The position numbers and the translations under genes were made by a program. Shown piece by piece: positions 1 to 59,768 of a DNA stretch of 64,000 bases. How positions within the stretch are numbered: position 1 is the stretch's first letter; every line of letters starts with the position of its first letter. The DNA comes from Glycera tridactyla (taxonomy: Eukaryota): contig OZ286472.1 of NCBI GenBank assembly GCA_965644265.1, positions 22,010,001 through 22,074,000 of the forward strand, given 5' to 3'. The notes beneath the pieces were generated by a model. The model ran no database searches. It had not been told where the DNA came from and saw nothing but the letters and a program-made list of their open reading frames with translations.

Positions 1-135
1 GGGGGTGGTAGAGGCTCTTCGTCTATCGAGAATGATGCCAGAGCTGAAGCCTGTTGAATTTCCGCATAAGGCGGAGGATCGACCGGGCTTTCACTGTTCA
101 TTGCCTGCAGGTTCGGACTTGATATTGGCTCTCGG
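1..135 (-). CDS. Probable coding exon of the FARP/Cdep-like gene (linker region), truncated by the window edge
   Basis: Acceptor tttttcattttgtgtgtag|C at 136/135. Phase matches the donor at 511 (AG+C=Ser). Reads SREPISSPNLQAMNSESPVDPPPYAEIQQASALASFSIDEEPLPP with no stop. Assignment to FARP is by position and strand only. Confidence 0.65.
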
Positions 136-510
136 CTACACACAAAATGAAAAACAATTCCCACTCAATAAGAGTAATACTATAATGTATTACATCTACA
201 ATAACATCTACAAAGCTATCATGAGGATATTGTTATCCAATGAGAAGTTCATTTTCTTGGTACTTCAATGTGCATTCTTTACTGTACTTCAATAGTCCAA
301 TTCAAGACTGAAGCATTACAGATGGGCCACGAATATATTCATGTAGTTGAATGAGTACATAACAAAACAAGTAGCATTTCCTCTTCGAAACATAGATATC
401 TAAAGATCCATAGAACAATCACATCCCAGGAGATTGCTAAGAGTATCGATTATATCGTTATTTATTTTTTTTTCCCCGTCCAAATCTTTTCATTATAATC
501 ATTGTCTCAC

Positions 511-727
511 CTGAAATGCCGTACATGTTCGTCCTTGGAGTACTGTACTTTTTCTGGAATATTTTCGATCTCTGGCGAGCGTGCAAGATAGAGGTCATCT
601 TCGATGGAACGAGGTGGATGGCTGAGAGAGAAGGCAGGTGCTGACATCTTGCGGTCATCTTTTGTGAGCATGAACTGTGTGGGATCGATGCGGTGTGCCC
701 GTGGTGATGGCTGAGGATAGAGACGGC
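511..727 (-). CDS. Probable coding exon of the FARP/Cdep-like gene (linker region)
   Basis: Acceptor tttttcttcgtcag|GC at 728/727 and donor AG|gtgaga at 511/510. 217 nt, phase 1 in and phase 2 out. Open frame RLYPQPSPRAHRIDPTQFMLTKDDRKMSAPAF...EHVRHF, CpG-rich relative to the flanking intron. Confidence 0.7.
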
Positions 728-10925: not shown

Positions 10926-11543
10926 ATCCCTTGTAGGTATATCATGAAGCATTCAGGTGCAAATATCAGCAGGGGTTGGAAGGTGTGAATTTTGTTCTTG
11001 GTCAACATTTTGTACCTAAATACTTCACAATCGGTATCATGAAGTAGCTGGCTGCAAAACGAAGGTCAGGGTGACCATGTGCACTTTCAAACCTCAACTA
11101 ATATATCAGACCTTGTACCTCCAGGCAGGAAGTATCTCCGGGGAAGAAAATATAAGAGGACACCATTTGGATGATTACAACATCAGAAGCAATATTTTGT
11201 CAGCTGACCGTGTATCTACCACATAACCATTTCCATCGCATACCCAGATTCACTAAAATTACCCAAGGACATTGTGCAATTAAATCCTATCTTGAATGTT
11301 TGCAAAGCAAAGAAGGTCTCCAATGAAACCATAATGACTGCAAGTACTACTCAGTGATTCTATGAAAAGACAGCACAGATCAGTTCTGTATTCAACATGA
11401 AAATTCCTCTTTTATGAGAGACCACCTCCTGAAGACCACACTTTAGTGACACTCTTCTAGCAGGTTTGACTATATGCATCAAGATGATGAGTGTAAAATG
11501 AGAAAGTGTAATTTTCAAAGGTCATACTAGAGGAAAGGTTGTA

Positions 11544-11721
11544 TAGTGAAACCTGTCTTGGGGGACCCCTCTTTTGGGAGACCACCCTCTAACGGGAGAC
11601 CGCTCTCGATCGGCTCTTCTCTATTTGACATAGTCAAATATACCTTCAATGAGAGACCACTTGTCTTGAGAGACCACTTTTTGTTGAAATTTGGGGCAGT
11701 CTCTCAAGACAGGTCTTACTG
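11544..11721. mobile_element. Tc1/mariner-type MITE (178 bp), same family as 29351-29528
   Basis: TA flanks. TIR tAGTGAAACCTGTCTTG versus CAGTAAGACCTGTCTTG. Internal tatttgacatagtcaaata palindrome. Colinear with the 29351 copy. Confidence 0.85.
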
Positions 11722-25495: not shown

Positions 25496-26756
25496 AGAAC
25501 AATCACCTTCCTGGGAATTGCAGCATCATAGAATGACAGTCCATTCTGGGACGTGAGTCATTATGGGCCAATGAGATCTGTTATAAGCATGATTGACGGG
25601 GCTGCCATGGGGTCTAGTCGGATGTTACTGCGCATGCGCAAACCACACCAAACATCTCATGTCTACCCAGAGATTTCTAGTCACACAATATCAAAGCAAC
25701 ACAACAGTAGCAATCAACCCTCATGCAATCTTTTCTCCTCCAATTGTAATTCAGGAAAAAAGGAAGGTCACAGGGAACCAAGTTTATTCAAGCAGGGGCC
25801 AGAAAAGGTACTGAACAGTGAATCACAATTTTTTCTCACATTTGAAGAATAGGAGACCTCATACAATACATGTGGAAACCGTGTCTCTGAGAATGGATTG
25901 ATAGCTCTTCACAAAATTCAAATCAGTAGAGATCAACTTGATCAAGGTTTCAACAGAGAGCTAGCTCCTTTCTGGAATTGCTTGCAAAATAAATGAAAGT
26001 TGTATTCAGAGGAACATTCTAGTTCCAGGAAGATACATCCCAAGTTTCTGAATGGTCATCGATGAAATGAAAACAACTGACCTTAAGAGATATTGACATT
26101 TAAGAGCTCAACCAGGAATCATAAGTATCGGGAATGGCTCTGAATTATGGTAAAACAAAATTTGGAACGTTAAGCCGATGAATGAGAAGCATAGGAAAGG
26201 AAGTCATCCTCTTTTCTATCTACCCAAAAAATCATGGAAGTTATCCTTCAAACATTTTTGGAAAGATGACTTAACATCTGATACTGAAGCCACTATCTGT
26301 AATGATAAAATACGTAAATTATGTAATTCAGTGAGAAATATTACACCAAAGAAACTGATTATACCTGAGCATCAACAACAGCACTCAATATTGCTGCGAA
26401 CATGGAAACTGGTTTCAGTGACCGAAAAGCTCAGAGTTTGAAATGAGGAAATGCATCATCTTTGGAGAATACTCATCCCATCAACTCAGCGAATGAAATA
26501 CTCTGAGCACATCAACAGAGTTGTGAATCATCTTTTTCAAAGTTGAACAATACATGTGTAAAATGGTATGTATAAGAACAATGGATTCCTTCCAAAATTT
26601 ACCCAAGACTTTTCCTGCCCCATTAGGACAGCAGCTCACAGAGCCTAGGGCTGGGATCATTAAAAAAAACATTGGGCGACCCCCAATTGTGCAGTCAAAT
26701 AACCAGCCAGCCTGCTGCAAAAGTCGAAGAGGGTGAGTGATTACTCAATTGAAGGA

Positions 26757-27380
26757 ATGAAAACAAGGTGGCATTTCCTGATGCCAAATAAGATAAGTAA
26801 TCAGCCAAAATTGTACGCACAATGGGGTACAAAAACACGATCATCACTCCTCGAAATCTACAACTCCACATTAGGAGCTGAACTCATTGTTAACTCTCAA
26901 AATGAACAGGTCTCCAATGAAAAATAAACTGCTCGGTCTCAAAGTGCATGACCAATTCACAAATGAAAACAAGGTGGCATTTCCTGATGCCAAATAAGAT
27001 AAGTAATCAGCCAAAATTGTACGCACAATGGGGTACAAAAACACGATCATCACTCCTCGAAATCTACAACTCCACATTAGGAGCTGAACTCATTGTTAAC
27101 TCTCAAAATGAACAGGTCTCCAATGAAAAATAAACTGCTTGGTCTCAAAGTGCATGACCAATTCACAAATGAAAACAAGGTGGCATTTCCTGATGCCAAA
27201 TAAGATAAGTAATCAGCCAAAATTGTACGCACAATGGGGTACAAAAACACGATCATCACTCCTCGAAATCTACAACTCCACATTAGGAGCTGAACTCATT
27301 GTTAACTCTCAAAATGAACAGGTCTCCAATGAAAAATAAATTGCTCGGTCTCAAAGTGCATGACCAATTCACAAATGAAA
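26757..27380. repeat. Tandem triplication of a 206-bp unit
   Basis: atgaaaacaaggtggcatttcc... starts at 26757, 26963 and 27169, with a stub at 27375. Copies differ at only a couple of positions (aactgctcgg / aactgcttgg / aattgctcgg). Confidence 0.95.
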
Positions 27381-29136: not shown

Positions 29137-29350
29137 TATAAACTCTTTACTATCACTGATACATTCACTTTTATACATCATGGAATGGATTCATCCTCGT
29201 GGAACAATATTCCAAGTATGCCCATATGCAAATTCCACTGAGTAGGTAAGCTAGCAAATCTATTTCATCACTTAGCTCAATCTGCAATCATAGATTAGGA
29301 GTACAATGTGAAATCTTGCTTTTCCTACTGCTGGTTGACAGATGTTACTA

Positions 29351-29528
29351 CAGTGAAACCTGTCTTGGGATACCCCTCTCTGGGGAGACCACCCTCTAAT
29401 GGGTGACCGCTATTTACCAGTTCTTCTCTATTTGACATAGTCAAATATACCTCCAATGAGAGACCACCTGTCTTGAGAGACCACTTTTCCTTGGCATTTG
29501 GGGCAGTCTCCCGAGACAGGTTTTACTG
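29351..29528. mobile_element. Tc1/mariner-type MITE (178 bp)
   Basis: TA flanks. TIR CAGTGAAACCTGTCTTGGGA versus CAGTAAAACCTGTCTCGGGA (18/20). Paralog at 11544. Confidence 0.9.
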
Positions 29529-30399: not shown

Positions 30400-30979
30400 A
30401 TGCAGCATTCACAATATACAATACGATGCTGACCACAATAGTAAGAGGCACACCATCAGTATGAGGGTAAAAATGATGAAGATGAATGACGAGATTTTAG
30501 AAACCAGGGTGGTGATGATATTGATGAGGGAGATGGCATCATTCTCTTGGTTATAGCAATGAGGTAGTGGTGATGAGATGATAGCGGTGGTTGTCATGAC
30601 AGCACTGATGTGATGGTCACTGTGCTGTCACCATGAACAAGGTGGCATCATCTGGTATCTAGTTGAGATGATGGTGGTGTGTTTTATTAGTCTGAGGAAA
30701 TGTAAGACAAGGATAGTCTATTCACATTGCTGGTTGACGATGATGAAGATGATGATGACAATAAGGATGGTGATGAGGATGACGATAACAGTGAATTTGA
30801 CGATGATGATCTCACAGATGAAGATGATGATAAGGAGAATGACAATGACATTGCCAATTGATGGTGCTGATGATAATCATAGTGGTGACCCAGATAAAGG
30901 TAATAATGACGATGTTAATGATGATGTCAACGGTAGTGATGATGAGGAAATTAGGATGATAATGAGGATGGTGACCCCA

Positions 30980-31017
<38 letters not shown>

Positions 31018-31250
31018 AGTGATGATGAACATGGGAATGATATTGAGATGACTTATCTACAATAGTATGGAGCAGAATGATGCAGAGTTAATATTATATG
31101 TAGATTATTCACATCCCATCATCATAATCAGTGCCAGTTAGTGTTTTAACTTGTTATGATAACCGCAAAATAGCAACACCATCATCAGCAAGAGCAGCAG
31201 AGATAGTAGCAGCAAGCCCTTCATCCACTACAACAATCAATCAAATCATT
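30400..31250. repeat. Degenerate (GAT)n low-complexity region with a pure run at about 30981-31017
   Basis: Direct inspection. The Asp-, Met- or His-rich ORFs here are broken by stops and frameshifts. Confidence 0.85.
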
Positions 31251-32208
31251 CACCTACACTGCTCAAAGCCATCACTTGTTGTGGAATGTTTGCAATTTTC
31301 GATATTCAAAAGCTTCAAGGCTTTTATGAACAATGCTCAGAAATGGAAAATTATACAAACTTGTGGCAGCTCAGATTCTGAGCAATATCCAGCAATGATG
31401 ATGACAAAAAATTGTCATTCATCATTCATCGGCGAAATTTTGGAGTAAGATACGAGTGTGAAAATTTGAGAAATTTATACAATGAATGACATGATCAATC
31501 ATAAAACAAAAATAGTTATATTTCTCTCTCAAACACATCGCAATTGAAAGAAGGCAGCTCAGCTCATTCAACCAGCTTATAATAGCCTGGCCTTCTTTGA
31601 TTTACCATGATTAGAAAATGATCACTCCAATCACACTAGGGAAGTTTTCTCTTGTGTGATGAACATTTGTATCATGACCTCTTATTTTTCAAGTATTTGT
31701 GAGAATAATAATGAAGTGGTGGTAACGAGTCAATACTTCCTCGATTTTCACAAATGTTTGCCACTATACCAGCCTCAAAACGAAAACCATCGAAAATTCA
31801 AATGGGATCGCCATCAGCATGGAATATCAATACAACGTTTTTGGAATTACACTTCTTCATTGCTGGATGTGAAGCCATCGACAAGTTTTATTGGACACCC
31901 AACTCTCTATCATGTTTTCAACTTCCAAGTAGGATGAGTGGAATATTGAGATTTGAAACTGACTCGTTACTGGAATCATGATTGATTGAGCAGTAGCTGT
32001 GGTGAGAAAGTTTATTCAAAGCAATAGATACAATGAAAGGACAATGACCATGCTAGAATTTGTTCAAAAGCTTCTCACAACTAGTTAAACGCCCATATAA
32101 ACAGACCAAAAGATGACAGCAGAGTATTAGGAAAGATTATTGATGTGTTTGAGAGAGAAATCTGACAAGATCCTGTTATTAACGGTAGGAAGGGTTTTGG
32201 TGCAACAC

Positions 32209-35200
32209 CTAGTGCTCTGTTGAATCCCTAGGTGGCACTCTTGGTGACTGCTGAGAAGTGCCACCTGGCTGATTGTCAGTTTGCAAGTCTGCATATGGGT
32301 TACTATAAAAATGGCCTGTAGGCGAGACTGTTGTGTTCTCGTACATATGGCCATTAGATGACTCAGGTTTCTCCAATGGGATGGGAGGAATATTGTGCCG
32401 GGCAAGATGTCTACCGACAACACCCGGTGCAAGCTCCTCAAAATCCTCACTGGAGCTTGATTCTGAGTCAGTATCATGACTAGCAGTTGAATCAACTGAA
32501 AGACGTTGTTCTAACCGCTCTAGCGGCTCCAACATGTCTTCTGTATCCATACTGCCCTCGTGATTATCCTCACTACTTGAATCATCTGAATCATCCATTC
32601 CAACTGTCTCGTAAGAACCCCTCACTGCACCAGTATCCGACTCCAGCATACTACCATATTCACTCGACACAGTACCACCAACGGCTTCTTCATATATTGG
32701 AGGAGGCGGAGGAGGTGGGTCAAAATCCTCACTAGGGGTTCTAACCATGTAGGGATTAGCAAATACATTAGCCTGAAGTATCTGAGCAGGATCATCAAGA
32801 TCCTCACCTAAATAGTGTTCCATGTCACTCTCTTCGGAAGAGATGTCATGTTTTGGTGGAGGCGGTGGTGGTGGTAGTTTTGTTTTGTCCGGGGCACCCT
32901 CATTCTCTGAGCTAGATGAATCAAAACTATCACCATCAGCTCGACTATGATTGAGTGATGAGTCTAGTTCACTCAGGATGGGCTCATTCTCAGCTAAGAG
33001 CTTAAGACTATCTTCTTCATCTTCAATATTAACCTCAAACTGTGCCTCAAACTCATCAATGGTAGGCAGATCATCATTTGTGGGTAATTCTACATCACTC
33101 TCTGATGAGATATCATGAAGCAGTGGTGGTGGTGGTGGCGGAGGGGGTAAATCTAGACTTTCTGAACTCTTATTTGGTGAATCAGGCAACAGCTCAATTT
33201 CGTCATCAGCTTCAAGATTTTGTTCAAACTTCATCTCAAATGCATCCAGATCAGAGAGTTCATAATCTGGTGGCACTTCAACAAGGTCATCATCATCAGA
33301 GGAAATATCATGAAGAGGAAGAGGAAATTCAGCTTCTGACTTTGCCTGATTTGCATTGAATTTTTCATCACTGATTTTAGGCTCACCTTCACTGAGAAAA
33401 TCGTCTGAGAAATCATCCTGCTCTGCACCTAAGGCCTCTAACTTATCTTCAATAGAATCAATATCCTCTGACTTACTTCGATCAGAAACAAATGCTGTAC
33501 CATCAGACATATTGAGATCATCTACTTGTCGAGATTCTTCACTCTGGATACTTCGAATATCATCAGAGAAATCATCCTGCTCAGCGCCAGCAGCCTGGAG
33601 CCTCTCTTCTATTGTCTTCTCAAATTCATCACTGGCTGCGCTGGAGGCAAAATCACTTGGAGATTCAATACGAACTTCAACTGGTGGTGGCGGTGGTAAT
33701 GGTGGAGATAGTGGTGGGGGTGGAGTGTGGGATGGTACTGGAGTTTTTACTTCTACTTCTTCCTCTGTCATTTCATCTGATGAAGAGGAAGAGGAAGGTA
33801 ATCTCATAACTCGACTAGTACGCGGACTAGGTTCTTCCTCATCTGCGAATGGAAAATCTTGTTGCGATAGACGGAATGCTACACTCTCTACATCAATGGG
33901 CTGCTTCTTTTTGGAAGGACAATCGCCACTAGAGTCTGAACTAGTTGAATCACGCTGTCCATCGATGATGTTATCATGTTTCTTGTTACGAAGCTTGACC
34001 CGCTTTTCTTCGCGATCAGACTCCATACTTGTATCAGATTCTGTAGTGGTGAGATCTTCTAATACAGCTTTCGGTGGCATGAGTGACTTCGGAGGGGTGG
34101 GTGCAGGTGGTGGCGGTGGAGGTTGTTTTCTTGATGGCGATTTTGGATGCTTCACAATCTGTGACATCTTTGTTTCGATATCCTCATCCTCTTCATCTTT
34201 CATTGAGGACGTTCTTGACCCTCGTGATCCTTGCTCTTCAAAATCAATCCGATCCTGTTTTCGCAAAGGCTTTGGTGGTGGTATATTGCTGCTACACTGT
34301 GAGATAGAATCCTCCGATATGATATAAGAATCTCTGACAACAGGTGGTGGTGTTACATTAACTTCTTGAATAGGTGGCAGTGGAGATCTTGTATCACGGG
34401 GTGGTGGTGATCTGGACCGGTCAAACTCCTGGACAGGTGAATGCAGTGGTGATGTTTCCCTTACTGGGGAGTGCGGTGGACTAGGCATCTGTCTGACTGG
34501 TGAGCTTGTGGATCTGGAGTCTCTTATTGGTGACTGTCTTGACTGAGGCACATCCCGGACTGGTGAAGAAGGTGGGGACCTGAGAGGTGAATATCGTGGT
34601 GGCTCTTCTCTGACAGGAGACTGACGTGGAGACTGCTCTTTGACCGATGACCTTCTTGGTGGCTGTTCTTTGACTGGAGACTGACGTGGAGACTGTTCTT
34701 TGATGGGTGACCTTCGTGGTGGCTGCTCTTTGATGGGTGACCTTCGTGGTGGGGACTCTCTGACAGGTGACTGACGTGGCGGGGTGTCCCGGACTGGTGA
34801 CCGGTGTGGTGGGGCCTCTATGGTAGGTGACCGATGTGATTGCTGCTCTTTGACTGGTGATTGAACTGGTGACTGATGCGAAGGCTGCATTTCTTTTACT
34901 GGCAGTGACGATGGCTTGCTCCTAACTTCTTTCTGAGGCAGTATTTCAGTCTCCATGTACACTTTATCTGGGGACTTTGTTTTGACCGGACTACGGGATG
35001 ACCTTGATGGGGACTCTTGTGGGCTCTCGGTAACATTTGCCTGTTTCTGGATGGATTTATCTTCCCTGCTGCGATGACGTATTCTCTCTTCATGCTTGTG
35101 TTGAATATGAGCAGATATTTCTTTTTCAAGAGATGGACTTATTGAATCATCGGCACTTGAGTAACTATTGACAGGAGGCAATTTATTATAACGAACATAA

Positions 35201-36244
35201 TCTACAGCACGCCGCGGTGATTTATCGCGATTTTTGGCAACAGGAATAATTGGACTGGACAGATTGGTCTTTATTCTGTCCAGCTCAGCTTTCTGTTGCT
35301 CACGAGTTAATCTGGTTGGTTGATAAGTGGATACATGTTTCAATGGCGGTGATAACGGCGTGTGAACCTGATTTGCATCCTTTTCAATGTGACGCCGATG
35401 CAAAACATACGGTATTGCATCGACCTCATCAGGCGTTTTCGCTTCGGTGCTATCAGGGGAGGATGCCCCATTCATCTTGACGTCAGCGGGGGAGGGGTCT
35501 TCATGTTGGACAACATTTCCATTGGGAACACTCTCAACATACACATCATTCACACTTCTCTCTCGCTCTCCCTCATCCTTTTGCTCATGTCCCTCAACCT
35601 TCTCACCGGCTTCTATCTGCTCAACTAAATCCCTAATCCCCAGCCTCTCTAATCTGGCTTCTTCCTCCAATCTCTCACACTCTTTTTCTATAGCCAACTC
35701 TTGCATCAATTTATCTTCATCTATATGCAAGACAGTATCAAGAACTTCATCTTCCGATTGATCATCGGCAAAATCTTGACTTAGATGGTAGGAATCATGT
35801 GAGATATTATCATCATTGTCATTTGCATTTTGATCGACCAGTTGGCCGGCGGCATCATAACTAAGCTGATAATAAGAATAATGAAAATCATCAGTGGCAC
35901 CTTTTTGATCGACATGGTTGTCATGGTGATGACCCCTCATGCGCTCATCCTCCTCATCATCAAGCCATTCTTCGCTACCCGATGGTGCTGAGAAGTCGCG
36001 ATCCCGGTCTTTTTTAGGAGAATTTATTGACCTACTTCCACTCTGAGAGCTGTCATCGTGCACTTCGGCGGTTTCGACTCGCATGGCATCACCGTCACGT
36101 GTAATGTTCATATCCAAGGTATGGCTGCCACTAGAAGTGCTCGTGTTATGGCCACCAAAGTGAATATCACGTGAGTTTAATGTGCTCGTGTTGGGCGTCG
36201 CTCCATGACTACGACTAACGGACATTCGACCCATGCTTGTCGTC
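32209..36244 (-). CDS. Cdep/FARP: Giant (4036-nt) exon of the FARP/Cdep-like gene, open to a TAG stop; encodes about 1344 aa of acidic, Ser/Pro-rich disordered sequence
   Basis: Acceptor ttattatctggttgcag|G at 36245/36244. The first base completes the CG left by the FA exon (FER|TTSMGRMSVSRS...). 1345 codons without an internal stop in AT-rich DNA. Ends ...VPPRDSTEH-TAG at 32211-32209. Confidence 0.88.
34591..34860 (-). repeat. Coding minisatellite, 9 x 30 nt (SPxK/R decapeptides) inside the giant exon
   Basis: SPVKEQQSHR SPTIEAPPHR SPVRDTPPRQ SPVRESPPRR SPIKEQPPRR SPIKEQSPRQ SPVKEQPPRR SSVKEQSPRQ SPVREEPPRY spans exactly 270 nt. Confidence 0.92.
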
Positions 36245-38438
36245 CTGCAACCAGATAATAAATTACAATCAGCAAATTCATCAAAAACTACAAACTTGAA
36301 TGAAATATAAGATGGAAAGAATCCAAATTCAGTTATCTACAAAGGTCTTCCTCGTTAGTTGGTGATACAACCTGTAAAGAGTTCATTGATCTTGTAGTGC
36401 ATGTACATCCATAAGTAGTCTTTCTCAAAGATTGGTGATCATTAGACAAATAATCAATAGCAACCCAGATGGATAAATTTTGACCTACATCCATAACATT
36501 CACTCTTGATAGCAAAGGTTCACTTGGCCAATCTTTCAGAAGCCCCTTACCATTTCCATTGATGAATCTCAAGATGAGACTGTATCCAACTTGTTAATAT
36601 CCCAACAAAGTTATCATTGACAAATCAAACCCCCATGGCAACACGATAACATTCAAAACAATGTGTATATTTCCACATCAAGGAATGCATGAATGTATTT
36701 TAATCTACTGATGCATTCTGATCTGGGTATGAGTCAAAGACCTGAAAAAGAAAGTGATTATCATGGACGGCTCAGTGATGAATGGTAGAGATAAAGTATG
36801 CAAACTTGAATAGTCATCATCTTCTGAATATATAAACTATTAAGGCTAATGTAACATATGTCAGTTGAGAGTTACCATCTTTGAGGCGTTGCTATACATA
36901 AAGTACGAACGTGGACCATCTTTGAAGGCCAAAAAACAAGCAAGCTGGAGAGGATTGACCTCGGACCAACACCTTCATATTTTGGCGACACTATGAATAC
37001 CTTGGACATCAATCAAAATAAGACCTTTTGGCAGCATGAAGGGAGAAACTTTTCATTTGAGGGATTTCCGAAAAACCATCCACAATTGCTAATTACAGTG
37101 ACCTCAAACAACAAAATGGGATAACTAATGACCTGCTCATGTTGCACTATTTATCAATCCGGAACTGATAAGGAACACATGGTAAAAGCTGAATGATATA
37201 CCAATTGTTGGAACAAAATTATCCAAGAAAGAAGTATGAAAGTATTCTCAGGAGACAATATTCACCTCCTGGAAAATTCTGCAAATTATCAGAAATAAGC
37301 ATTATCATCAAAACGACTAGTTATATCAACACTATAATATAATAATGGCCTATTCCATACAGGAACACAGCTCACTGAAGCTTGTGTCTGGATGAACAAA
37401 GAATTTATAATACTGAATGTCGCCTTTAAATTTCTGGTTCAGAAATTGCAAGAGCATTATGCTTTTCAATTTTTGGAAACTTGAGCCAATAGATTCATTG
37501 CCTCAACCTCTTTGACAAATTTTTCCAACAAAGATCATGAATGCTGCATTGAAAGGGTCAAGAAAGCAACTGGATACATCTGACACCTGTGAAGGAGAGG
37601 TGCAGTTCCTCAATATGATGTGAATCAATGAACTTTGTGATTGGCTAAATCCAGAACATCAGTTTCCTCAAAGTGAATGACACAAATACGATGAACCAAC
37701 ACGAGAGTGAGTTCGTGAAACCAGCAAACCGAGGATCAATTTTGGAAACTCTGGGTACGACTGGAAAAATCGCCATTTTCTGAAGAAAAAAAAATAGTGG
37801 AGCATTTGGAATAAGAACCTGAGAATACATATCAAGAGCTCACCCCATTCAAGTATAGGGAATCCGGGATGGATTAGAAATGACCATTTCTCAAAAAGCA
37901 TATTTACCACAATCATCTAAAATTTTGATCTTCAATAGGGGCACTTATTGTGGCCACCAACAATATTATGAAAACATACACATATTCAATTCAATTACAG
38001 ACAGTTCTGGATATTCAGGGATTCTTGTTTTCCTCGAAATTGCTCTGAAATGCAGCAGGCATACAACACAATCTTGTCATTATTCACAGTCAAATCAGAT
38101 ACTTCATAATCTCTACATCCTCCTGGACATTCATGAAAATATACAATCACATTTGGTGTTATTTCATTACAGATCTATTTTATCATTGGCTCACTACACA
38201 TGCATCATTATTCCATTATTTGTTAACTGTTGGCATGTCCAAATCACAGCACAAGATGCTGATAGGTCATTCACACAAAGTGTGAATTGAAGACCTTTCT
38301 GGGGAAAAGGGCTATAACATCATGGTTCCAGCAGGAAAGACATAGGTCTTTCTTACTTTTGATGGCCAAATTGTTCTCGTACAAATAAATGTGAAAACAT
38401 GAATCAATGGGAGAATGGAACAAAGTGTGACCACAATA

Positions 38439-41741: not shown

Positions 41742-44700
41742 TATATGTTATCAGATACTACACTAAACTACTGGTCAGGGGTGATATCAAAACAAATCTT
41801 ACATTGTTGGTAAGATCAGTCTGATAGCAAGGATCGGGTGTTCCCACTAAGCCCTTCTAAGACTCATTATCCTCTCTGAGCAGAGATAGCTGTGACATAT
41901 GATGTGCAAAGGGAAATGCATACAATTGTCCCAACAAAACTACTCTGGAAAATAGATTTCTAATAATTTTTTCTGATCTTTATCACATGACATTTGTTGA
42001 ACCAAAATTAAAACTTTGCACTTTGACTCTGTAGTCCTACCAAGACATGAATAGTGGATCTAGAAGTTGAACTCTCGCCCTTAGCTGAGACAGGTTTCTG
42101 ACTTTGAAAACTACCATGAGAAGACCAGGTATCATATGTAGTCCTCAGAAGTGAGTGTTGATCAAAATGAAGAAAGCATTCACTATGCCTCTGTCTTTGC
42201 TGCTATTTCATGCTGCTCAAATGGTCATGTGCTGAAGGTTTAGCATCATTTAAATGTAGCAACTGTTATCACCTTGACAACAGGGGCCTTTTGACTTGAA
42301 TCGCATAAGATCTTTCTGAGCAGCTGATGTTTTCTTGGAGAAGCATAGCAACTGGAAACACAACTGTCTACCACAACTGACTTGCCCCATTATATAAGTG
42401 AAAATGACTGCAGATAGGACAGAGGTGAGTGAGGAATATTAAACCATACCACCAACAATTTAGTTGTGAGAAGGTAGTGGAATTAACAAACCACATGTTA
42501 TTATCCCAGGTGCTCAATATTCAGCCAGATGTTGATATTAGTTGAAATGAAAGAGGACTACAACACCAGCACATACAGTCCCTAAATAATAGGAGAGCAA
42601 GAACAGACCGTGATGCAGCTGAATTCTGAGAATCGCACGGAATCCGAGTCATTGGCAGATGGCATGATGGGACGGCTATCATTCAATCTGCCAGTCACTC
42701 CATCTAGTGGGATCCAACACTTCCAACCACGTAATGGCATGTTCTTGCTTTCGTCCCACAGATATGAATGAATTGCCAAAGTCTGATCACATATTAGCTT
42801 CGTTTTCAATTCCAAAAATTCTTTTTTGATCCAAACATGATATCACATTGGCCTGCTCCACAACATTTGGAGTTTATCTGTGGGATAAAAATGGTTAGCC
42901 AATCAGTAAATATAACCACAAGAGAGAAGGGGTTAGTTTGTATTGGTGTCAGACAATCCCATAAATCTGCATTTTCCTTCATAAATGCAGCAAATTCTGT
43001 TATTATATGATGGCGGGACCTTTTCTAAGAGAGTGTAACGATGGGTACTAATAATATAAACAACAAGCTGAAGCACTCCAGAACTTCCATCACGTGCTGT
43101 CAGTCAAACGTCACTCATGCTATGAGGCAGGGTCATTCTCAAGGACATAGCAAGGTCGACATCAGTACCTTGGCGGCGTGGTTGGTTGCTGTTCATTGTT
43201 TTGTAAGTTTCGTTCAAGGGACCAGTGATGTGAGCGATCATAGAGTGGTTTGACAGGTGCCCGCTTTGGAGTCATTGGAATCGGACCAAACTTAGTGGAC
43301 GTCATACTAAAGTGACAAATAAAATAACAAATCAATCAATTTGTACGCCAACATGATCCACCATCTTACTTCAACACCCATGCCGACTGAATCACCCATA
43401 TTAGTAAATCAAAGCTCCCAAGAAATCAATTATAACCTAATAACCCTGTAGATGAAATTGAGCTACGTGAAAACTCATTTAAGTGCTAATCTATATGAGC
43501 TTCAGATTTAAAGTGTATATACATAGGATGGGCTGAATGTCACATCATTTGTTAGAAAAATTAACGAGGTCATACAGTAGAATCCATCCACCTGTAAAAG
43601 AATCTGCAAATAGTCCAATAATCCTGAAATATCACAATATTGTCTGAAAAAAGAAATGGGGTACATGATTGAATTTCAAGACTAGATGTCCCAACCAACA
43701 ACAGGGAAAAATCTCAGGTGCACCCCACCACCATAAAGAGAATGAATGAAGCATCGGTCCCACAAAAATGTGCATCGGTGTTGCTTGATGTTCAATACAT
43801 CTCATTACTGACTACATGCTTCTCATTTGAAGAAAACCTGACAGTGACAAGGTTTTCCTCAATACAGACTGTGATCAGAGAGCTTTTCTAGGCACATACA
43901 AATTGCTTTGAGCATATGATAATCTCATGGATGTGCCTCATAGTACTTTTCTCTCAGAATTATCTGCAACAGCCGTACCATCAAATCTGAATGAAAACCA
44001 AACCAAAAGTACGAGCCATTTTACTATCAGTATTATAGCATTTGTAGTCTTCTAATTTAGCCCCTCTCCTGAATCCTGGGTAGAGTGAATTAGATTTTGG
44101 GAGTGAAAATACAAAACTCAATCTCCCGATGGCAGAGTATAATTTTTTTAGTGATGAATTTAGTGTGAAGAGAGAACACCAGTGTTTCGACTCCACCATT
44201 AAAGAAACCCTATACCATATGAAATGGCTTCGCATGTACCTGCGTATGTATGCCTCTGAGGAACAAATCTCAGCTAAAATTGGTGGGTGGGACTTGAATA
44301 GTCACTCACTCGTCAGAAAAGTTGGAATTCGCATATTGATCAGGTGACTATTCACACCGATATCTTGCCCTCAAAATAGCCTAGTTTCAGGTTGCTTTAG
44401 TGGTGTGAACTTACAGAAATTCGGGAGAGTGGATTCATTTGGAATAGTGATTCTTCCAATCTACTCTCCTGATGAGAGAGTGGCTGAAATAGTTTTTCGT
44501 GAAGACTGCATTTGTCTCTTCTGATCTGTATGAATCAATAATTGAATAGCTTTCAATAATTGCAATATATAGGTAAAAGGAATAAAGTATAGTTATATCA
44601 TGATACCTTTTGATGGGCAAAGGCTAGGATAGGAGACATATTTTCATAGGAAGACAGACATACAAATGAACATGAATGGACACCAACATAGAATACACAC

Positions 44701-44751: not shown

Positions 44752-44930
44752 NNNNNNNNNNNNNNNNNNNNNNNNNNNNNNNNNNNNNNNNNNNNNNNNN
44801 NNNNNNNNNNNNNNNNNNNNNNNNNNNNNNNNNNNNNNNNNNNNNNNNNNNNNNNNNNNNNNNNNNNNNNNNNNNNNNNNNNNNNNNNNNNNNNNNNNNN
44901 NNNNNNNNNNNNNNNNNNNNNNNNNNNNNT
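44752..44930. other. Assembly gap (N run)
   Basis: Run of n characters next to an AC-rich tract. Confidence 1.
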
Positions 44931-56647: not shown

Positions 56648-56722
56648 CGTTCAAAAGGCGGTCGTTTTGTGAAGTTTTCTCGGACATACTCTACTAACTG
56701 CTTCTGTGTTCGCCCACAGTAC
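56648..56722 (-). CDS. Cdep/FARP: FARP/Cdep exon: FERM-adjacent (FA) domain
   Basis: ttttgctgcag|G...CG|gtaagt, 75 nt, phase 2/2. Encodes (R)YCGRTQKQLVEYVRENFTKRPPFE(R), recognisable as the FARP1/FARP2/Cdep RYSGRTQKQ...FER motif. Confidence 0.95.
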
Positions 56723-57357: not shown

Positions 57358-57518
57358 CTAAAAGATGAGCCCCTACTGACTACTCGTGTTTTATTCCGTG
57401 GTAACCGTTTCACTCGATGACATCGGAAGAACGCGTGATGCTCTATACATTTCTTCCAGAAGTTCTTTGTTTCATTTCGTGTCTCAAAATAAAACTCGAC
57501 TGTATCCCTGTAGTAGCC
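57358..57518 (-). CDS. Cdep/FARP: FARP/Cdep exon: end of FERM-C lobe and start of FA domain
   Basis: actttttcag-type acceptor (cttttcag|GGC) and AG|gtaagt donor, 161 nt. Encodes GYYRDTVEFYFETRNETKNFWKKCIEHHAFFRCHRVKRLPRNKTRVVSRGSSF(R), with the FERM-C FWKxCxExHxFFR and FA SRGSSFR signatures of the FARP/Cdep/FRMD7 clade. Confidence 0.95.
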
Positions 57519-58324: not shown

Positions 58325-59768
58325 AACAAGAGCACCGCAAAGCGGGGCATAATACGCCATTGCCGCGATTAGTGAGGCAGACTTTTTTCATCTGGAATGG
58401 GATTTGACCTTTATTGCCGTGACTAGTGACACAGACTGTTTTCATCCAGATATTGTCTGCAATAGGATTTTATCTTATTGCACTTGGTGACCGGGATCGA
58501 AGGTTATGACTGCGAAATCAATAGGCATCTTCCTAGACCAATAATGAATAGATATACAAAGTTTCAAATCAATAGCTATGAGGCTGATATGGATAGGGCT
58601 CTTTCCTAACCAAGGTGAATATATGAACAGTTCGAAATCAATAACTTTCAAACTATTTTGAGGTTATCATGCAGATATTGTCTGGATATGCGATTTGACA
58701 TTTTTGCACTTTGTGACCTTGAAATTCAAGATCTGCAGTACCATCATCACAATTTGGCTAGCCCAAAAACTTTATGAGTTATTCGCCAGGAATGGGTCGT
58801 GACGTTTTTGCACTCAGCAACCTTGAAATTCATGCCGTGACCCCACAAGCAATAGGCTTCCTCCCAGAGGCAAGTTGATTAGGTATGCCAAGTGGCAAAT
58901 CAATAGCTCCACAACTTTTACAGTTATTGCCCGGAAAGCGTCTGTAGCCGAGATTTGACTCAGTGACCATGAAAATCAAGGTCGCGACCCCACAATCGAA
59001 AGGCTTCCTCCCAGATCCAAGGTGATTAGGTATACCAAGTGGCAAATCAATAGCTCTTTTTGAGTTATCGTCCGGAAATGGTCCGGACTCGAGATTTGAC
59101 CTTTTGCACTCAGTGACAATGAAAATCAAGGTCGCGACCCCACAATCGAAAGGCTTCCTCCCAGATCCAAGGTGATTAGGTATATCAAGTGGCAAATCGA
59201 TAGCTCTGAAACTTTTTGAGTTATCGTCCGGAAATGGTCCGGACCAGAGATTTGACCTTTTTGCACTCAGCGACCTTGAGAATCAAGGTCGCAACCCCAC
59301 AATCGAAAGGCTTCCTCCCAGACCCAAGGTGATTAGGTATACCAAGTGGCAAATCAATAGCTCTAAAACTTTTTGAGTTATCGTCCGGAAATGGTCCGGA
59401 CCAGAGATTTGACCTTTTTGCACTCAGCGACCTTGAAAATCAAGGTCGCAACCCTACAATCTGGAGGCTTCCTCCCATACCCAAGGTGATTAGGTATACA
59501 GAGTGGCAAATCGATAGCTCTGAAACTTTTTGAGTTATCATCCGGAAATGGTCGGGACCAGAGATTTGACCTTTTTGCACTCAGCGACCTTGAAAATCAA
59601 GGTCGCAACCCCACAATTGGAAGGCTTCCTCCCAGACCCAAGGTGATTAGGTATACCAAGTGGCAAATCAATAGCTCTAAAACTTTTTGAGTTATCGTCC
59701 GGAAATGGTCCTCCGGACGCACAGACGGACGGACAGCACCATAACATAATACGCCCGATGGCGTATAA
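58325..59768 (-). mobile_element. Non-autonomous Helentron-associated element (HINE/DINE-1/Pearl-like) with an internal tandem array
   Basis: Minus strand starts TTATACGCC-ATCG-GGCGTAT (subTIR plus hairpin partner), then a (GTCC)-type microsatellite and 157-bp tandem repeats. It ends GGCGTATTATG-CCCCGC-TTT-GCGG-TGCTCTTGTT (subTIR, stem-loop, CTTGTT terminus). Confidence 0.85.
58940..59712. repeat. Tandem array of 157-bp units (about 5 conserved units, with decayed units extending to about 58400)
   Basis: gaRaatcaaggtcgc at 58971, 59121, 59278, 59435 and 59592 (150 bp, then 157 bp three times). Confidence 0.95.

What the first reader, a model, noticed from the sequence alone, without database searches (positions are those of the whole stretch)
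32209..36244. Giant terminal exon converts a FERM-RhoGEF gene into a GEF-less FERM scaffold isoform
Seen: the FA exon splices in phase to a 4036-nt exon with no stop until TAG at 32209, and further exons of probably the same gene lie over 31 kb downstream. Known: FARP1/2 and Cdep have FERM-FA-linker-DH-PH-PH, while the vertebrate paralog FRMD7 has FERM-FA plus a tail and no GEF. Inference: this is a composite internal/terminal exon. Splicing at an internal donor would give the canonical GEF, and read-through would give FERM plus about 1340 aa of disordered tail with no catalytic domain. That would be a FRMD7-like product made by RNA processing rather than gene duplication, reminiscent of giant ankyrin exons. 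Phase-1 donor candidates are G|GTGAG at 35607, 33387 and 32808, all Gly-Glu codon pairs, and none is proven. Large alternative isoforms may already be annotated for some invertebrate Cdep orthologs; I cannot check this.
Basis: partly seen in the sequence, partly recalled or inferred. Interest (0 to 1): 0.8.

Follow-up and report, generated by a model that had tools for sequence, protein, structure and literature searches.

The report
FARP gene's GEF-or-tail switch exon
One 4-kb exon of an invertebrate FERM-RhoGEF (FARP/Cdep) gene either ends early at a weak, deeply conserved splice site, giving the normal enzyme, or is read to its end, giving a GEF-less scaffold with a 1,230-residue extra tail; this design is already published for the worm gene frm-3 and is shown here to be old and widespread.

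Summary
On the minus strand, one open exon runs from an acceptor at 36244 to TAG at 32211-32209, in phase with the FA exon.

- **Splice site.** Transcript contigs from four public runs (one study) join base 35901 to an exon at 727.
- **Donor conservation.** This weak donor is conserved nucleotide for nucleotide in eight species, Haliotis included.
- **Canonical form.** FARP homologues with RhoGEF and PH domains match only the first 114 codons, then the exon at 727.
- **GEF-less form.** Annotated FERM-FA proteins of molluscs, an annelid, a brachiopod and ticks continue into the tail.
- **Distal ORF.** It is under purifying selection (26 synonymous to 10 non-synonymous changes) and is kept open in about 70 protein clusters. 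It is disordered but carries ordered short motifs.

Not shown here: the poly(A) site, one RNA molecule spanning 35901, and the DH-PH-PH exons, which lie outside the window.

C. elegans frm-3a/frm-3b is published with this same architecture. This is therefore a new member of a known kind. The new parts are its protostome-wide age and the homologous tail.

The parts
57358..57518 (-). Exon encoding the end of the FERM C-lobe and the start of the FA domain (acceptor cttttcag|G, donor AG|GTAAGT, ends in phase 2)
   Evidence: Pfam FERM_C E=4.7e-9. The best solved relatives are the FARP2 and FARP1 FERM domains. 87-93% identical to FARP homologues by tblastn. Sequence read.
56648..56722 (-). FA-domain exon, 75 nt (acceptor tgctgcag|G, donor CG|GTAAGT, phase 2 at both ends)
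   Evidence: 77-88% identical to the FA region of FARP homologues. Pfam places FA at residues 313-353 of P0015.
43169..43306 (-). Alternative 138-nt cassette exon (46 codons, frame-preserving) between the FA exon and the giant exon
   Evidence: An X3 transcript contig that covers 35900-36246 continues with letters that are the reverse complement of 43198-43171. Splice sites ctttag|T and AAG|GTACTG were read.
35901..36244 (-). Proximal 344 nt of the giant exon, shared by both isoforms. It encodes the end of the FA region and a conserved Ser/Thr-rich linker.
   Evidence: Contigs of all four runs cover exactly this stretch at higher depth. Canonical GEF homologues align only to this part of the exon.
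35895..35903 (-). Internal 5' splice site AAG|GTGCCA (last exon base 35901, phase 1). It is weak, with no G at +5.
   Evidence: Loose ends at 35900 in runs X1, X3 and X4 equal the reverse complement of 726-697. The pattern A-A/G-G|GTG is kept in eight species, and the Gly codon there is always GGT.
32209..35900 (-). Distal part of the giant exon: 1,230 further codons plus TAG. It is an intron for the GEF form and coding for the GEF-less form.
   Evidence: Open frame. 26 synonymous against 10 non-synonymous differences to transcript contigs. Transcript contigs tile it. About 70 clusters of homologous long ORFs or FERM-FA-tail proteins exist. No Pfam family matches. AlphaFold gives pTM 0.20 with isolated helices only.
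35116..35823 (-). Three tail-specific motifs, conserved in order from ticks to this animal: NDNDDNISHDSYHL (35823-35782), IPYVLHRRH (35415-35389), and VDYVRYNKLPPVNSYSSADDSISPSLEKEI (35205-35116)
   Evidence: Alignments. Collinear BLASTP match to the Ixodes FERM-FA-tail protein, E=3e-6. hhalign probability 87%. Coordinates.
34594..34860 (-). 30-nt (10-residue) tandem repeat array encoding an SP/RR-rich stretch specific to this lineage
   Evidence: Tandem Repeats Finder. An in-frame 12-nt deletion at 34853 in an X3 contig.
32284..33315 (-). C-terminal motif field: three poly-Pro + HDISSE(S/D)D units and two NPY motifs. The last NPY motif (FYSNPYADL, 32310-32284) lies 24 codons before the stop.
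   Evidence: Motif scan across homologues. A terminal (V/F)(F/Y)SNPYA motif sits close to the stop in Lingula and several other species.
31224..32208 (-). Presumed 3' UTR of the read-through form, with AATAAA at 32016-32011 and 31892-31887
   Evidence: X1 contigs lie at 31902-32165 and 31224-31374, with no depth at 30800-31193. Signals listed. The cleavage site was not determined.
511..727 (-). Next exon of the GEF form (acceptor tcgtcag|G, donor CAG|GTGAGA). It encodes part of the FA-to-DH linker.
   Evidence: Joined to 35901 in transcript contigs. 51-69% identical to residues 477-542 of P0015 and to its counterparts. Sequence read. The junction codon G+GC is in frame.

Best explanation
The window holds the middle of a FARP/Cdep/FRM-3-type FERM-RhoGEF gene on the minus strand. 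The exon that starts at 36244 is a composite exon with two fates.

- **Spliced form.** If the weak internal 5' splice site at 35901 is used, only the first 344 nt are kept. A 35.2-kb intron is removed and the message continues at 727 into the linker and, outside the window, the DH-PH-PH module. This is the canonical exchange factor.
- **Read-through form.** If that site is skipped, translation runs on for 1,230 more codons to TAG at 32211-32209, and the transcript presumably ends at a poly(A) site below it. The product is FERM-FA plus a largely disordered, motif-bearing tail, with no catalytic module.

The choice is therefore a competition between a weak splice donor and downstream 3'-end formation (a composite terminal exon, or intronic polyadenylation).

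**Shown here:** the exon and its phase, the 35901-to-727 junction in RNA, conservation of the donor, purifying selection on the distal frame, and homologous GEF-less proteins in other phyla.

**Inferred:** the poly(A) site, continuity of the long mRNA in this species, the presence of DH-PH-PH downstream, and the function. By analogy with C. elegans FRM-3A, the likely function is a membrane or synaptic scaffold that recruits partners through FERM-FA, with the tail adding docking motifs.
For: - Open 4036-nt exon in phase with the FA exon.
- Transcript contigs in X1, X3 and X4 stop at 35900 and continue with the start of the exon at 727. X2 stops at the same place.
- The junction codon is in frame.
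- Homologues with RhoGEF and PH domains (P0015, P0024, P0029 from Lineus, P0030) match FERM_C, FA, 36244 to about 35989, then 727-511. GEF-less homologues (Haliotis, Paralvinella, Lingula) match deeper parts of the exon.
- The donor A-A/G-G|GTG is kept in 8 of 8 species despite 28-51% tail identity.
- Of 39 differences to the contigs, 29 are synonymous against 22% expected (p below 1e-6). The only indel inside the frame is 12 nt, while a 2-nt insertion lies just past the stop.
- Depth is confined to the ORF plus about 1 kb below the stop. There is none in the upstream intron flank.
- In Haliotis cracherodii two annotated gene models start at the same coordinate: a 1365-aa FERM-FA-tail product ending in a 3054-nt exon, and a 1136-aa FERM-FA-RhoGEF-PH-PH product that runs on.
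- Tick, oyster, scallop and snail models are all GEF-less where they include the tail.
Against: - No listed contig bridges 35901 into the distal part, so continuity of the long mRNA in this species is inferred.
- Contigs cannot show RNA ends, so no poly(A) site is demonstrated. X1 has two contigs below the stop that could be 3' UTR or pre-mRNA.
- All four runs come from one study, are only guessed to be RNA by their record, and differ from the window by 1-5%.
- DH, PH and the N-terminal FERM exons lie outside the window.
- There is no protein-level evidence.
- In C. elegans the FERM-FA part alone rescued the synaptic phenotype, so a role for the tail is not established anywhere.
Confidence: 0.8

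Rival explanations
1. The distal ORF is also, or instead, an internal coding insert. A second donor far inside the exon (for example aag|GTGAGC at 33387 or cag|GTGGCA at 32265, both phase 1) would join most of the tail to the exon at 727 and give a giant FERM-tail-GEF protein.
For: Several phase-1 donor-like sites exist, and 33387 is the best consensus match in the exon. One X1 contig ends exactly at 33387.
Against: No loose end or joint to 727 was listed at those places. A graph branch towards 727 would be expected to end one base further on, as it does at 35900. Every annotated model that contains tail motifs lacks RhoGEF and PH. The stop follows a conserved terminal NPY motif in many species.
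Confidence: 0.07
2. The distal sequence is simply retained intron or pre-mRNA, and its protein is not made in this species. The open frame would be a relic.
For: Distal contigs are short and shallow (depth 2-5, against 7-24 for the first 344 nt). X1 also has contigs below the stop.
Against: There is a strong excess of synonymous changes, and the only indel within the frame is in-frame. The frame is open for 1,000-2,300 codons in about 70 clusters across phyla. There is no depth in the upstream intron flank.
Confidence: 0.05
3. The ORF is a separate single-exon gene nested in a FARP intron, with its own promoter and start codon (ATG at 36234).
For: ORF callers on unannotated assemblies report it as a stand-alone protein starting at the first ATG. 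No contig here links it to upstream exons beyond the shared 344 nt.
Against: Homology and the open frame reach the acceptor at 36244, and the first 114 codons are demonstrably spliced to upstream and downstream FARP exons. The first residues complete the FA domain. Gene models in Haliotis, Elysia, Bulinus, Saccostrea, Paralvinella, Lingula and Ixodes join FERM-FA to the tail.
Confidence: 0.04

Closest known systems
C. elegans frm-3 (FRM-3A / FRM-3B)
   Same: One gene gives two products: FERM-FA plus a tail without a recognisable domain (FRM-3A), and FERM-FA-GEF-PH-PH (FRM-3B). [quoted passage not shown] This is the same composite-exon logic as here.
   Different: Here the tail is 1,344 residues from a 4-kb exon and shares ordered motifs with molluscs, annelids, brachiopods and ticks. 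Whether the worm tail shares them was not tested, because no worm sequence was in hand. The function is tested in the worm and not here.
Vertebrate FRMD7
   Same: FERM-FA followed by a domain-less tail and no GEF. It is the closest paralogue of FARP1/2 and is treated as the FRM-3 homologue in functional work (PMC7405782).
   Different: FRMD7 is a separate gene, whereas here the GEF-less product comes from the FARP gene itself. The profile search with tail-specific sequence returned no FERM-bearing protein of FRMD7's size among the hits scanned. The likeness is therefore architectural only.
FARP1/FARP2/Cdep (FERM, ARHGEF and pleckstrin domain proteins)
   Same: The FERM C-lobe and FA sequences are closest to FARP. 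The spliced form continues into the FARP linker.
   Different: The DH-PH-PH exons are outside the window. I know of no equivalent tail isoform described for vertebrate FARPs (from memory, not checked).
Composite terminal exons / intronic polyadenylation (classical case: immunoglobulin mu secreted versus membrane form)
   Same: A 5' splice site inside an exon competes with a downstream poly(A) site, and the outcome changes the protein's C-terminal half. This is a defined class in PMC5928244, PMC8559711 and PMC10960005.
   Different: The extension here is an exceptionally long conserved coding sequence (3.7 kb), and the splice site is conserved across phyla. Use of a poly(A) site is not yet shown.
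Giant ankyrin exons (480-kDa ankyrin-G, 440-kDa ankyrin-B)
   Same: A single very large exon encodes a long, mostly unstructured insert that gives an isoform new scaffolding properties.
   Different: Those are internal cassette exons that keep the C-terminal domains (from my own knowledge). Here the large part is terminal and replaces the catalytic module.

Membership tests
FARP/Cdep/FRM-3 gene family | FERM domain whose C-lobe is closest to FARP proteins | tested here: met
   Pfam FERM_C E=4.7e-9. The top solved matches are FARP2 (E=5.6e-10) and FARP1 FERM domains, ahead of 4.1 and PTPN proteins. 87-93% identity to FARP homologues. Only the last FERM exon is in the window.
FARP/Cdep/FRM-3 gene family | FA (FERM-adjacent) domain directly after FERM | tested here: met
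   The RGSSFR|YCGRTQKQLVEY...PPFE|R sequence is split over three exons. It aligns at 77-88% identity to the FA region of homologues whose FA is called by Pfam.
FARP/Cdep/FRM-3 gene family | DH (RhoGEF) domain followed by two PH domains | tested here: inconclusive
   No DH or PH exon lies in the window. The spliced form reaches the linker exon 727-511, which matches residues 477-542 of P0015, whose RhoGEF starts at 691. The X1 contig extends 3,065 nt beyond the junction.
frm-3a/frm-3b-type dual-output design | The GEF isoform arises from a donor inside the last exon of the GEF-less isoform | tested here: met
   The 35901-to-727 junction appears in transcript contigs. The ORF continues past the donor to a stop.
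frm-3a/frm-3b-type dual-output design | The GEF-less isoform carries FERM-FA plus a tail with no recognisable domain | tested here: met
   No Pfam family in the 1,344 residues. No named atlas relative. AlphaFold pTM 0.20. Homologous FERM-FA-tail models exist in other species.
frm-3a/frm-3b-type dual-output design | Both mRNAs are made from the same promoter region | tested here: inconclusive
   The spliced form is shown directly. The distal exon is covered by separate short contigs, with no listed contig across 35901. In Haliotis both gene models start at the same coordinate.
Composite terminal exon (intronic polyadenylation) | A poly(A) site is used downstream of the skipped donor, inside what is otherwise an intron | tested here: inconclusive
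   AATAAA lies 193 and 317 nt after the stop. Contigs reach 31224 and none lie at 30800-31193. Contigs cannot show RNA ends.
FRMD7 | Stand-alone gene without GEF exons | tested here: not met
   The same exon is spliced onward to FARP linker sequence.
FRMD7 | Tail sequence homologous to the FRMD7 C-terminal region | tested here: inconclusive
   The tail-specific profile found 71 representatives among 1.84 billion. Among those scanned or carrying precomputed domains, none is a FERM protein of about 700 aa. Fourteen hits were not scanned, and FRMD7 itself was not compared directly.
Giant internal exons of the ankyrin type | The giant exon is an internal cassette flanked by constitutive exons on both sides | tested here: not met
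   The frame ends in a stop that follows a conserved terminal motif. All tail-bearing models lack the downstream domains.

The most novel reading that the evidence does not exclude
The two-product FARP locus, including a homologous motif-bearing tail and its weak internal splice donor, was already present in the protostome ancestor and possibly the bilaterian ancestor. Vertebrate FRMD7 would then be a duplicate that fixed the read-through (GEF-less) output as a gene of its own. The three ordered tail motifs and the repeated poly-Pro/HDISSESD/NP(Y/F) units would be docking sites for a still unknown, conserved partner set that the GEF form never carries.
Probability: 0.3. Interest if true: 0.6.

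Novelty: new member of a known kind. Interest (0 to 1): 0.42.

Why it matters
FARP proteins are usually studied as exchange factors. Yet the worm work shows that the synaptic receptor-clustering role needs only FERM-FA, and FRMD7, a human nystagmus gene, is a GEF-less relative.

The same locus produces a GEF-less product by the same exon logic in spiralians. Its splice donor is conserved to the nucleotide, and its tail keeps ordered motifs as far away as ticks. This argues that the scaffold form is an old, selected output rather than annotation noise.

It gives concrete handles for experiments. One splice site could be strengthened or destroyed, and a handful of short motifs could be mutated or used as bait. 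It also flags mis-named database entries ('dentin sialophosphoprotein-like', 'unc-89-like', 'uncharacterized protein') as products of the FARP locus.

Tried and rejected
None has a listed junction or loose end in the RNA contigs. Homologues place the switch at 35901.
- **Family and fold searches on the tail.** Pfam found nothing. The ESM Atlas gave only low-scoring low-complexity look-alikes. AlphaFold on residues 116-400 gave no fold, only helices, so no fold search was run.
- **Rfam over the window.** No match.
- **Poly(A) signal conservation below the stop in seven relatives.** No consistent pattern, and no DNA similarity between the window's and L001's downstream sequence.
- **Joints and loose ends at 32854-32875, 33117-33148, 34096-34123, 34180 and 35961.** These sit on poly-Pro or acidic low-complexity coding and continue into unrelated sequence. 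I read them as chance matches from other transcripts.
- **Earlier notes of this scan.** None for this place.
- **Drosophila Cdep.** I looked for a published GEF-less isoform and found none in the papers opened.
- **DH/PH exons downstream of the Ixodes tail exon.** None within 10 kb.
- **Ground rules kept.** The two N runs (1401-1587, 44752-44929) were left as they are.
Full report
**The observation.** The minus strand carries an uninterrupted frame from the acceptor ttgcag|G at 36244 to TAG at 32211-32209. That is 4036 nt and 1344 sense codons. From the window's base composition, the chance of such a stop-free run is about 1e-38, and the next longest open stretch on that strand is 150 codons. 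Upstream on the same strand lie two exons.
- The last FERM C-lobe exon is at 57518-57358 (Pfam FERM_C). Its best solved relatives are the FARP2 and FARP1 FERM domains.
- A 75-nt FA exon is at 56722-56648.
- Both end in phase 2. The G at 36244 completes the codon in the frame of the long ORF, and the ORF's first residues finish the FA domain.

**Where the exon switches.** A search with the ORF found two kinds of relatives.
- Proteins with FERM, FA, RhoGEF and PH domains are the first kind: P0015, P0024, P0030 and Lineus 'FARP2-like' P0029. By tblastn they match the FERM_C exon, the FA exon, only the first 70-82 residues of the giant exon, and then an exon at 727-511 at the far end of the window.
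- GEF-less proteins match deeper parts of the exon: Haliotis XP_071084632, Paralvinella KAK2148799 and Lingula XP_013417928.

The alignment shows the two classes parting just after a conserved Lys/Gln-Gly. The DNA there reads AAAAAG|GTGCCA, with 35901 as the last exon base, in phase 1. The exon at 727 follows tcgtcag|G, so G+GC makes an in-frame Gly codon.

**RNA evidence.** Four public runs of one study hold parts of the stretch. Their record does not say RNA, but their contigs are spliced.
- Contigs of 3410, 2359, 1029 and 587 nt cover exactly 35900-36244/6.
- In X1, X3 and X4 they continue below 35900 with 30 letters that are the reverse complement of 726-697. The one-base offset arises because both continuations start with G.
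- This proves the 35901-to-727 junction across a 35.2-kb intron.
- The X3 contig continues above 36246 with the reverse complement of 43198-43171. That reveals a 138-nt frame-preserving cassette exon at 43306-43169.
- Short contigs of depth 2-5 tile the distal exon from 35842 down to 32341. In X1 they also lie at 31902-32165 and 31224-31374.
- No run has depth at 36316-36700 or at 30800-31193.

The tool warns that contig depth is a poor measure. With that caveat, the first 344 nt lie in contigs of depth 7-24. No listed contig bridges 35901, and contigs cannot show RNA ends.

**Is the distal frame coding?** The contigs differ from the window at 39 listed sites inside the frame. Of these, 29 are synonymous; distal to the donor the split is 26 to 10. 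Only 22% of possible changes are synonymous (binomial p between 1e-11 and 6e-6, depending on the assumed fraction). The only indel inside the frame is a 12-nt deletion within a 30-nt coding repeat, whereas a 2-nt insertion lies 90 nt past the stop. A tail-specific profile (residues 116-400, which excludes the shared part) found 71 representative proteins among 1.84 billion, 49 of them below E=1e-10.
- Most are single long ORFs of 900-2300 residues from unannotated assemblies.
- The annotated ones are all FERM-FA plus tail, or tail only, and never carry RhoGEF or PH. They come from Bulinus, Elysia, Saccostrea, Mizuhopecten, Haliotis, Paralvinella, Lingula and two Ixodes species.

**The donor is conserved as DNA.** The site reads A-A/G-G|GTG in the window, in six relatives with 28-51% tail identity, and in Haliotis. 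The Gly codon is always GGT and the next codon always starts with G, while the flanking residues vary. It never has the consensus G at +5. A weak donor kept for this long fits a regulated choice.

**Anatomy of the tail.**
- Composition is Ser 14%, Pro 12.5%, Glu 11% and Asp 10%.
- There is no Pfam family.
- AlphaFold on residues 116-400 gives pTM 0.20 and only isolated helices.
- The order of features is nevertheless conserved. The motifs NDNDDN(I/V)S(H/Q)DSY, (I/F)xY(V/L)LHRR and VD(Y/F)V..LP..DS(Y/F)SS.DDS..SLE(K/R)EI come first. A variable middle follows, which here includes a lineage-specific SP/RR repeat. Then come repeated poly-Pro + HDISSE(S/D)D and NP(Y/F) units. A last (V/F)(F/Y)SNPYA motif sits 20-30 residues before the stop.
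- The Ixodes protein P0091 has FERM_N, FERM_M, FERM_C, FA and a roughly 710-residue tail that tblastn places on one block at L008:93277-95910. It shows the first three motifs in the same order (BLASTP E=3e-6; hhalign 87%).

The tail is therefore homologous between Spiralia and a chelicerate.

**Same locus, two products elsewhere.** In Haliotis cracherodii the public annotation has two gene models that start at the same coordinate.
- One gives a 1365-aa FERM-FA-tail protein whose last exon is 3054 nt.
- The other gives a 1136-aa FERM-FA-RhoGEF-PH-PH protein and runs on past the first.

In C. elegans, Zhou et al. 2020 state that FRM-3A has FERM-FA and a C-terminal part without a recognisable domain. 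FRM-3 is also treated as the FRMD7 homologue in rescue experiments (PMC7405782).

**Mechanism.** The exon is a composite terminal exon, a recognised class of intronic polyadenylation (PMC5928244, PMC8559711).
- Use of the weak donor at 35901 removes the rest of the ORF together with its 3' end signals and leads to the exchange factor.
- Skipping the donor leaves a terminal exon that encodes the GEF-less scaffold.

The junction, the frame, selection and homology are shown. The poly(A) site (AATAAA at +193 and +317), the continuity of the long mRNA in this animal and the downstream DH-PH-PH are inferred. DH-PH-PH lies outside the window; in P0015 the linker exon matches residues 477-542 and RhoGEF starts at 691.

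Function is inferred from the worm: a membrane-proximal scaffold acting through FERM-FA. In this reading the conserved tail motifs are docking sites. NP(F/Y) and acidic Ser clusters recall endocytic and kinase-regulated motifs, but that is only a lead from memory.

**Rivals.**
- A nested single-exon gene is unlikely, because the first 114 codons are demonstrably spliced on both sides and many gene models join FERM-FA to the tail.
- A relic or retained intron is contradicted by the substitution pattern and the breadth of conservation.
- A further donor deep in the exon cannot be fully excluded. The best consensus site in the exon is aag|GTGAGC at 33387, and one X1 contig ends exactly there. No junction was listed, and no tail-bearing model has a GEF.

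**Verdict.** The design is known from C. elegans and is implicit in NCBI annotation of Haliotis, so this is a new member of a known kind. Three things are new:
- the design extends across protostome phyla;
- the splice donor is conserved as DNA;
- the tail is a homologous, motif-ordered region rather than arbitrary disorder.

No sequence link to the FRMD7 tail was found, and the idea that FRMD7 descends from the read-through isoform remains a hypothesis.

Noticed in passing
window 43169-43306 (-): A 138-nt frame-preserving cassette exon lies between the FA exon and the giant exon. It is supported by one X3 transcript contig. The Lineus FARP2-like isoform X5 also has extra sequence at this position.
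   Followed up: partly
window 33387 (-): The best consensus donor inside the giant exon is aag|GTGAGC, in phase 1. A 170-nt X1 contig ends exactly on its last exon base. No junction was listed, so this could be chance or a second, rarely used donor.
   Followed up: partly
window 34594-34860 (-): A 30-nt tandem repeat encodes roughly nine SP(V/I)(K/R)EQPPR(R/Q)-like units and is absent from the relatives aligned. An X3 contig carries an in-frame 12-nt deletion at 34853, so the array varies in length.
   Followed up: partly
window 33356-34327 (+): A 323-codon ORF (TTG start) lies antisense to the giant exon. It is most likely a by-product of the Ser/Pro/Glu/Asp-rich codon usage opposite, and no evidence of a gene was sought.
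   Followed up: no
window 26756-27380 and 58800-59711: Two intronic tandem arrays: 206 nt x 3 at 99% identity, and 157 nt x about 5-6 at 87-92%. Other dispersed repeats recur in the introns; for example, similar translated stretches appear near 11530-11703 and 29328-29522.
   Followed up: no
window 30690-31090 (-): A triplet microsatellite ((ATG)16 on the + strand at 30980-31028) and surrounding low-complexity sequence lie 1.1-1.5 kb below the stop. Read laying skipped 30973-31033 as a repeat.
   Followed up: no
window 32854-32875, 33117-33148, 34096-34123: Poly-Pro coding stretches attract pieces of unrelated, much deeper contigs (depth up to 140) in all four runs. These give spurious joints.
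   Followed up: partly
Public records: Lingula XP_013417928, Mizuhopecten XP_021358601, Haliotis XP_071084628/32/33, Saccostrea XP_062582355: Tail-type products of the FARP locus are named 'dentin sialophosphoprotein-like', 'muscle M-line assembly protein unc-89-like' or 'uncharacterized protein'. In Haliotis the two outputs appear as two gene models with the same start.
   Followed up: partly
window 3-164 (-): An open stretch at the very edge of the window contains a PPPY motif. It may be the next linker exon after 727-511, but no homologue matched it.
   Followed up: no
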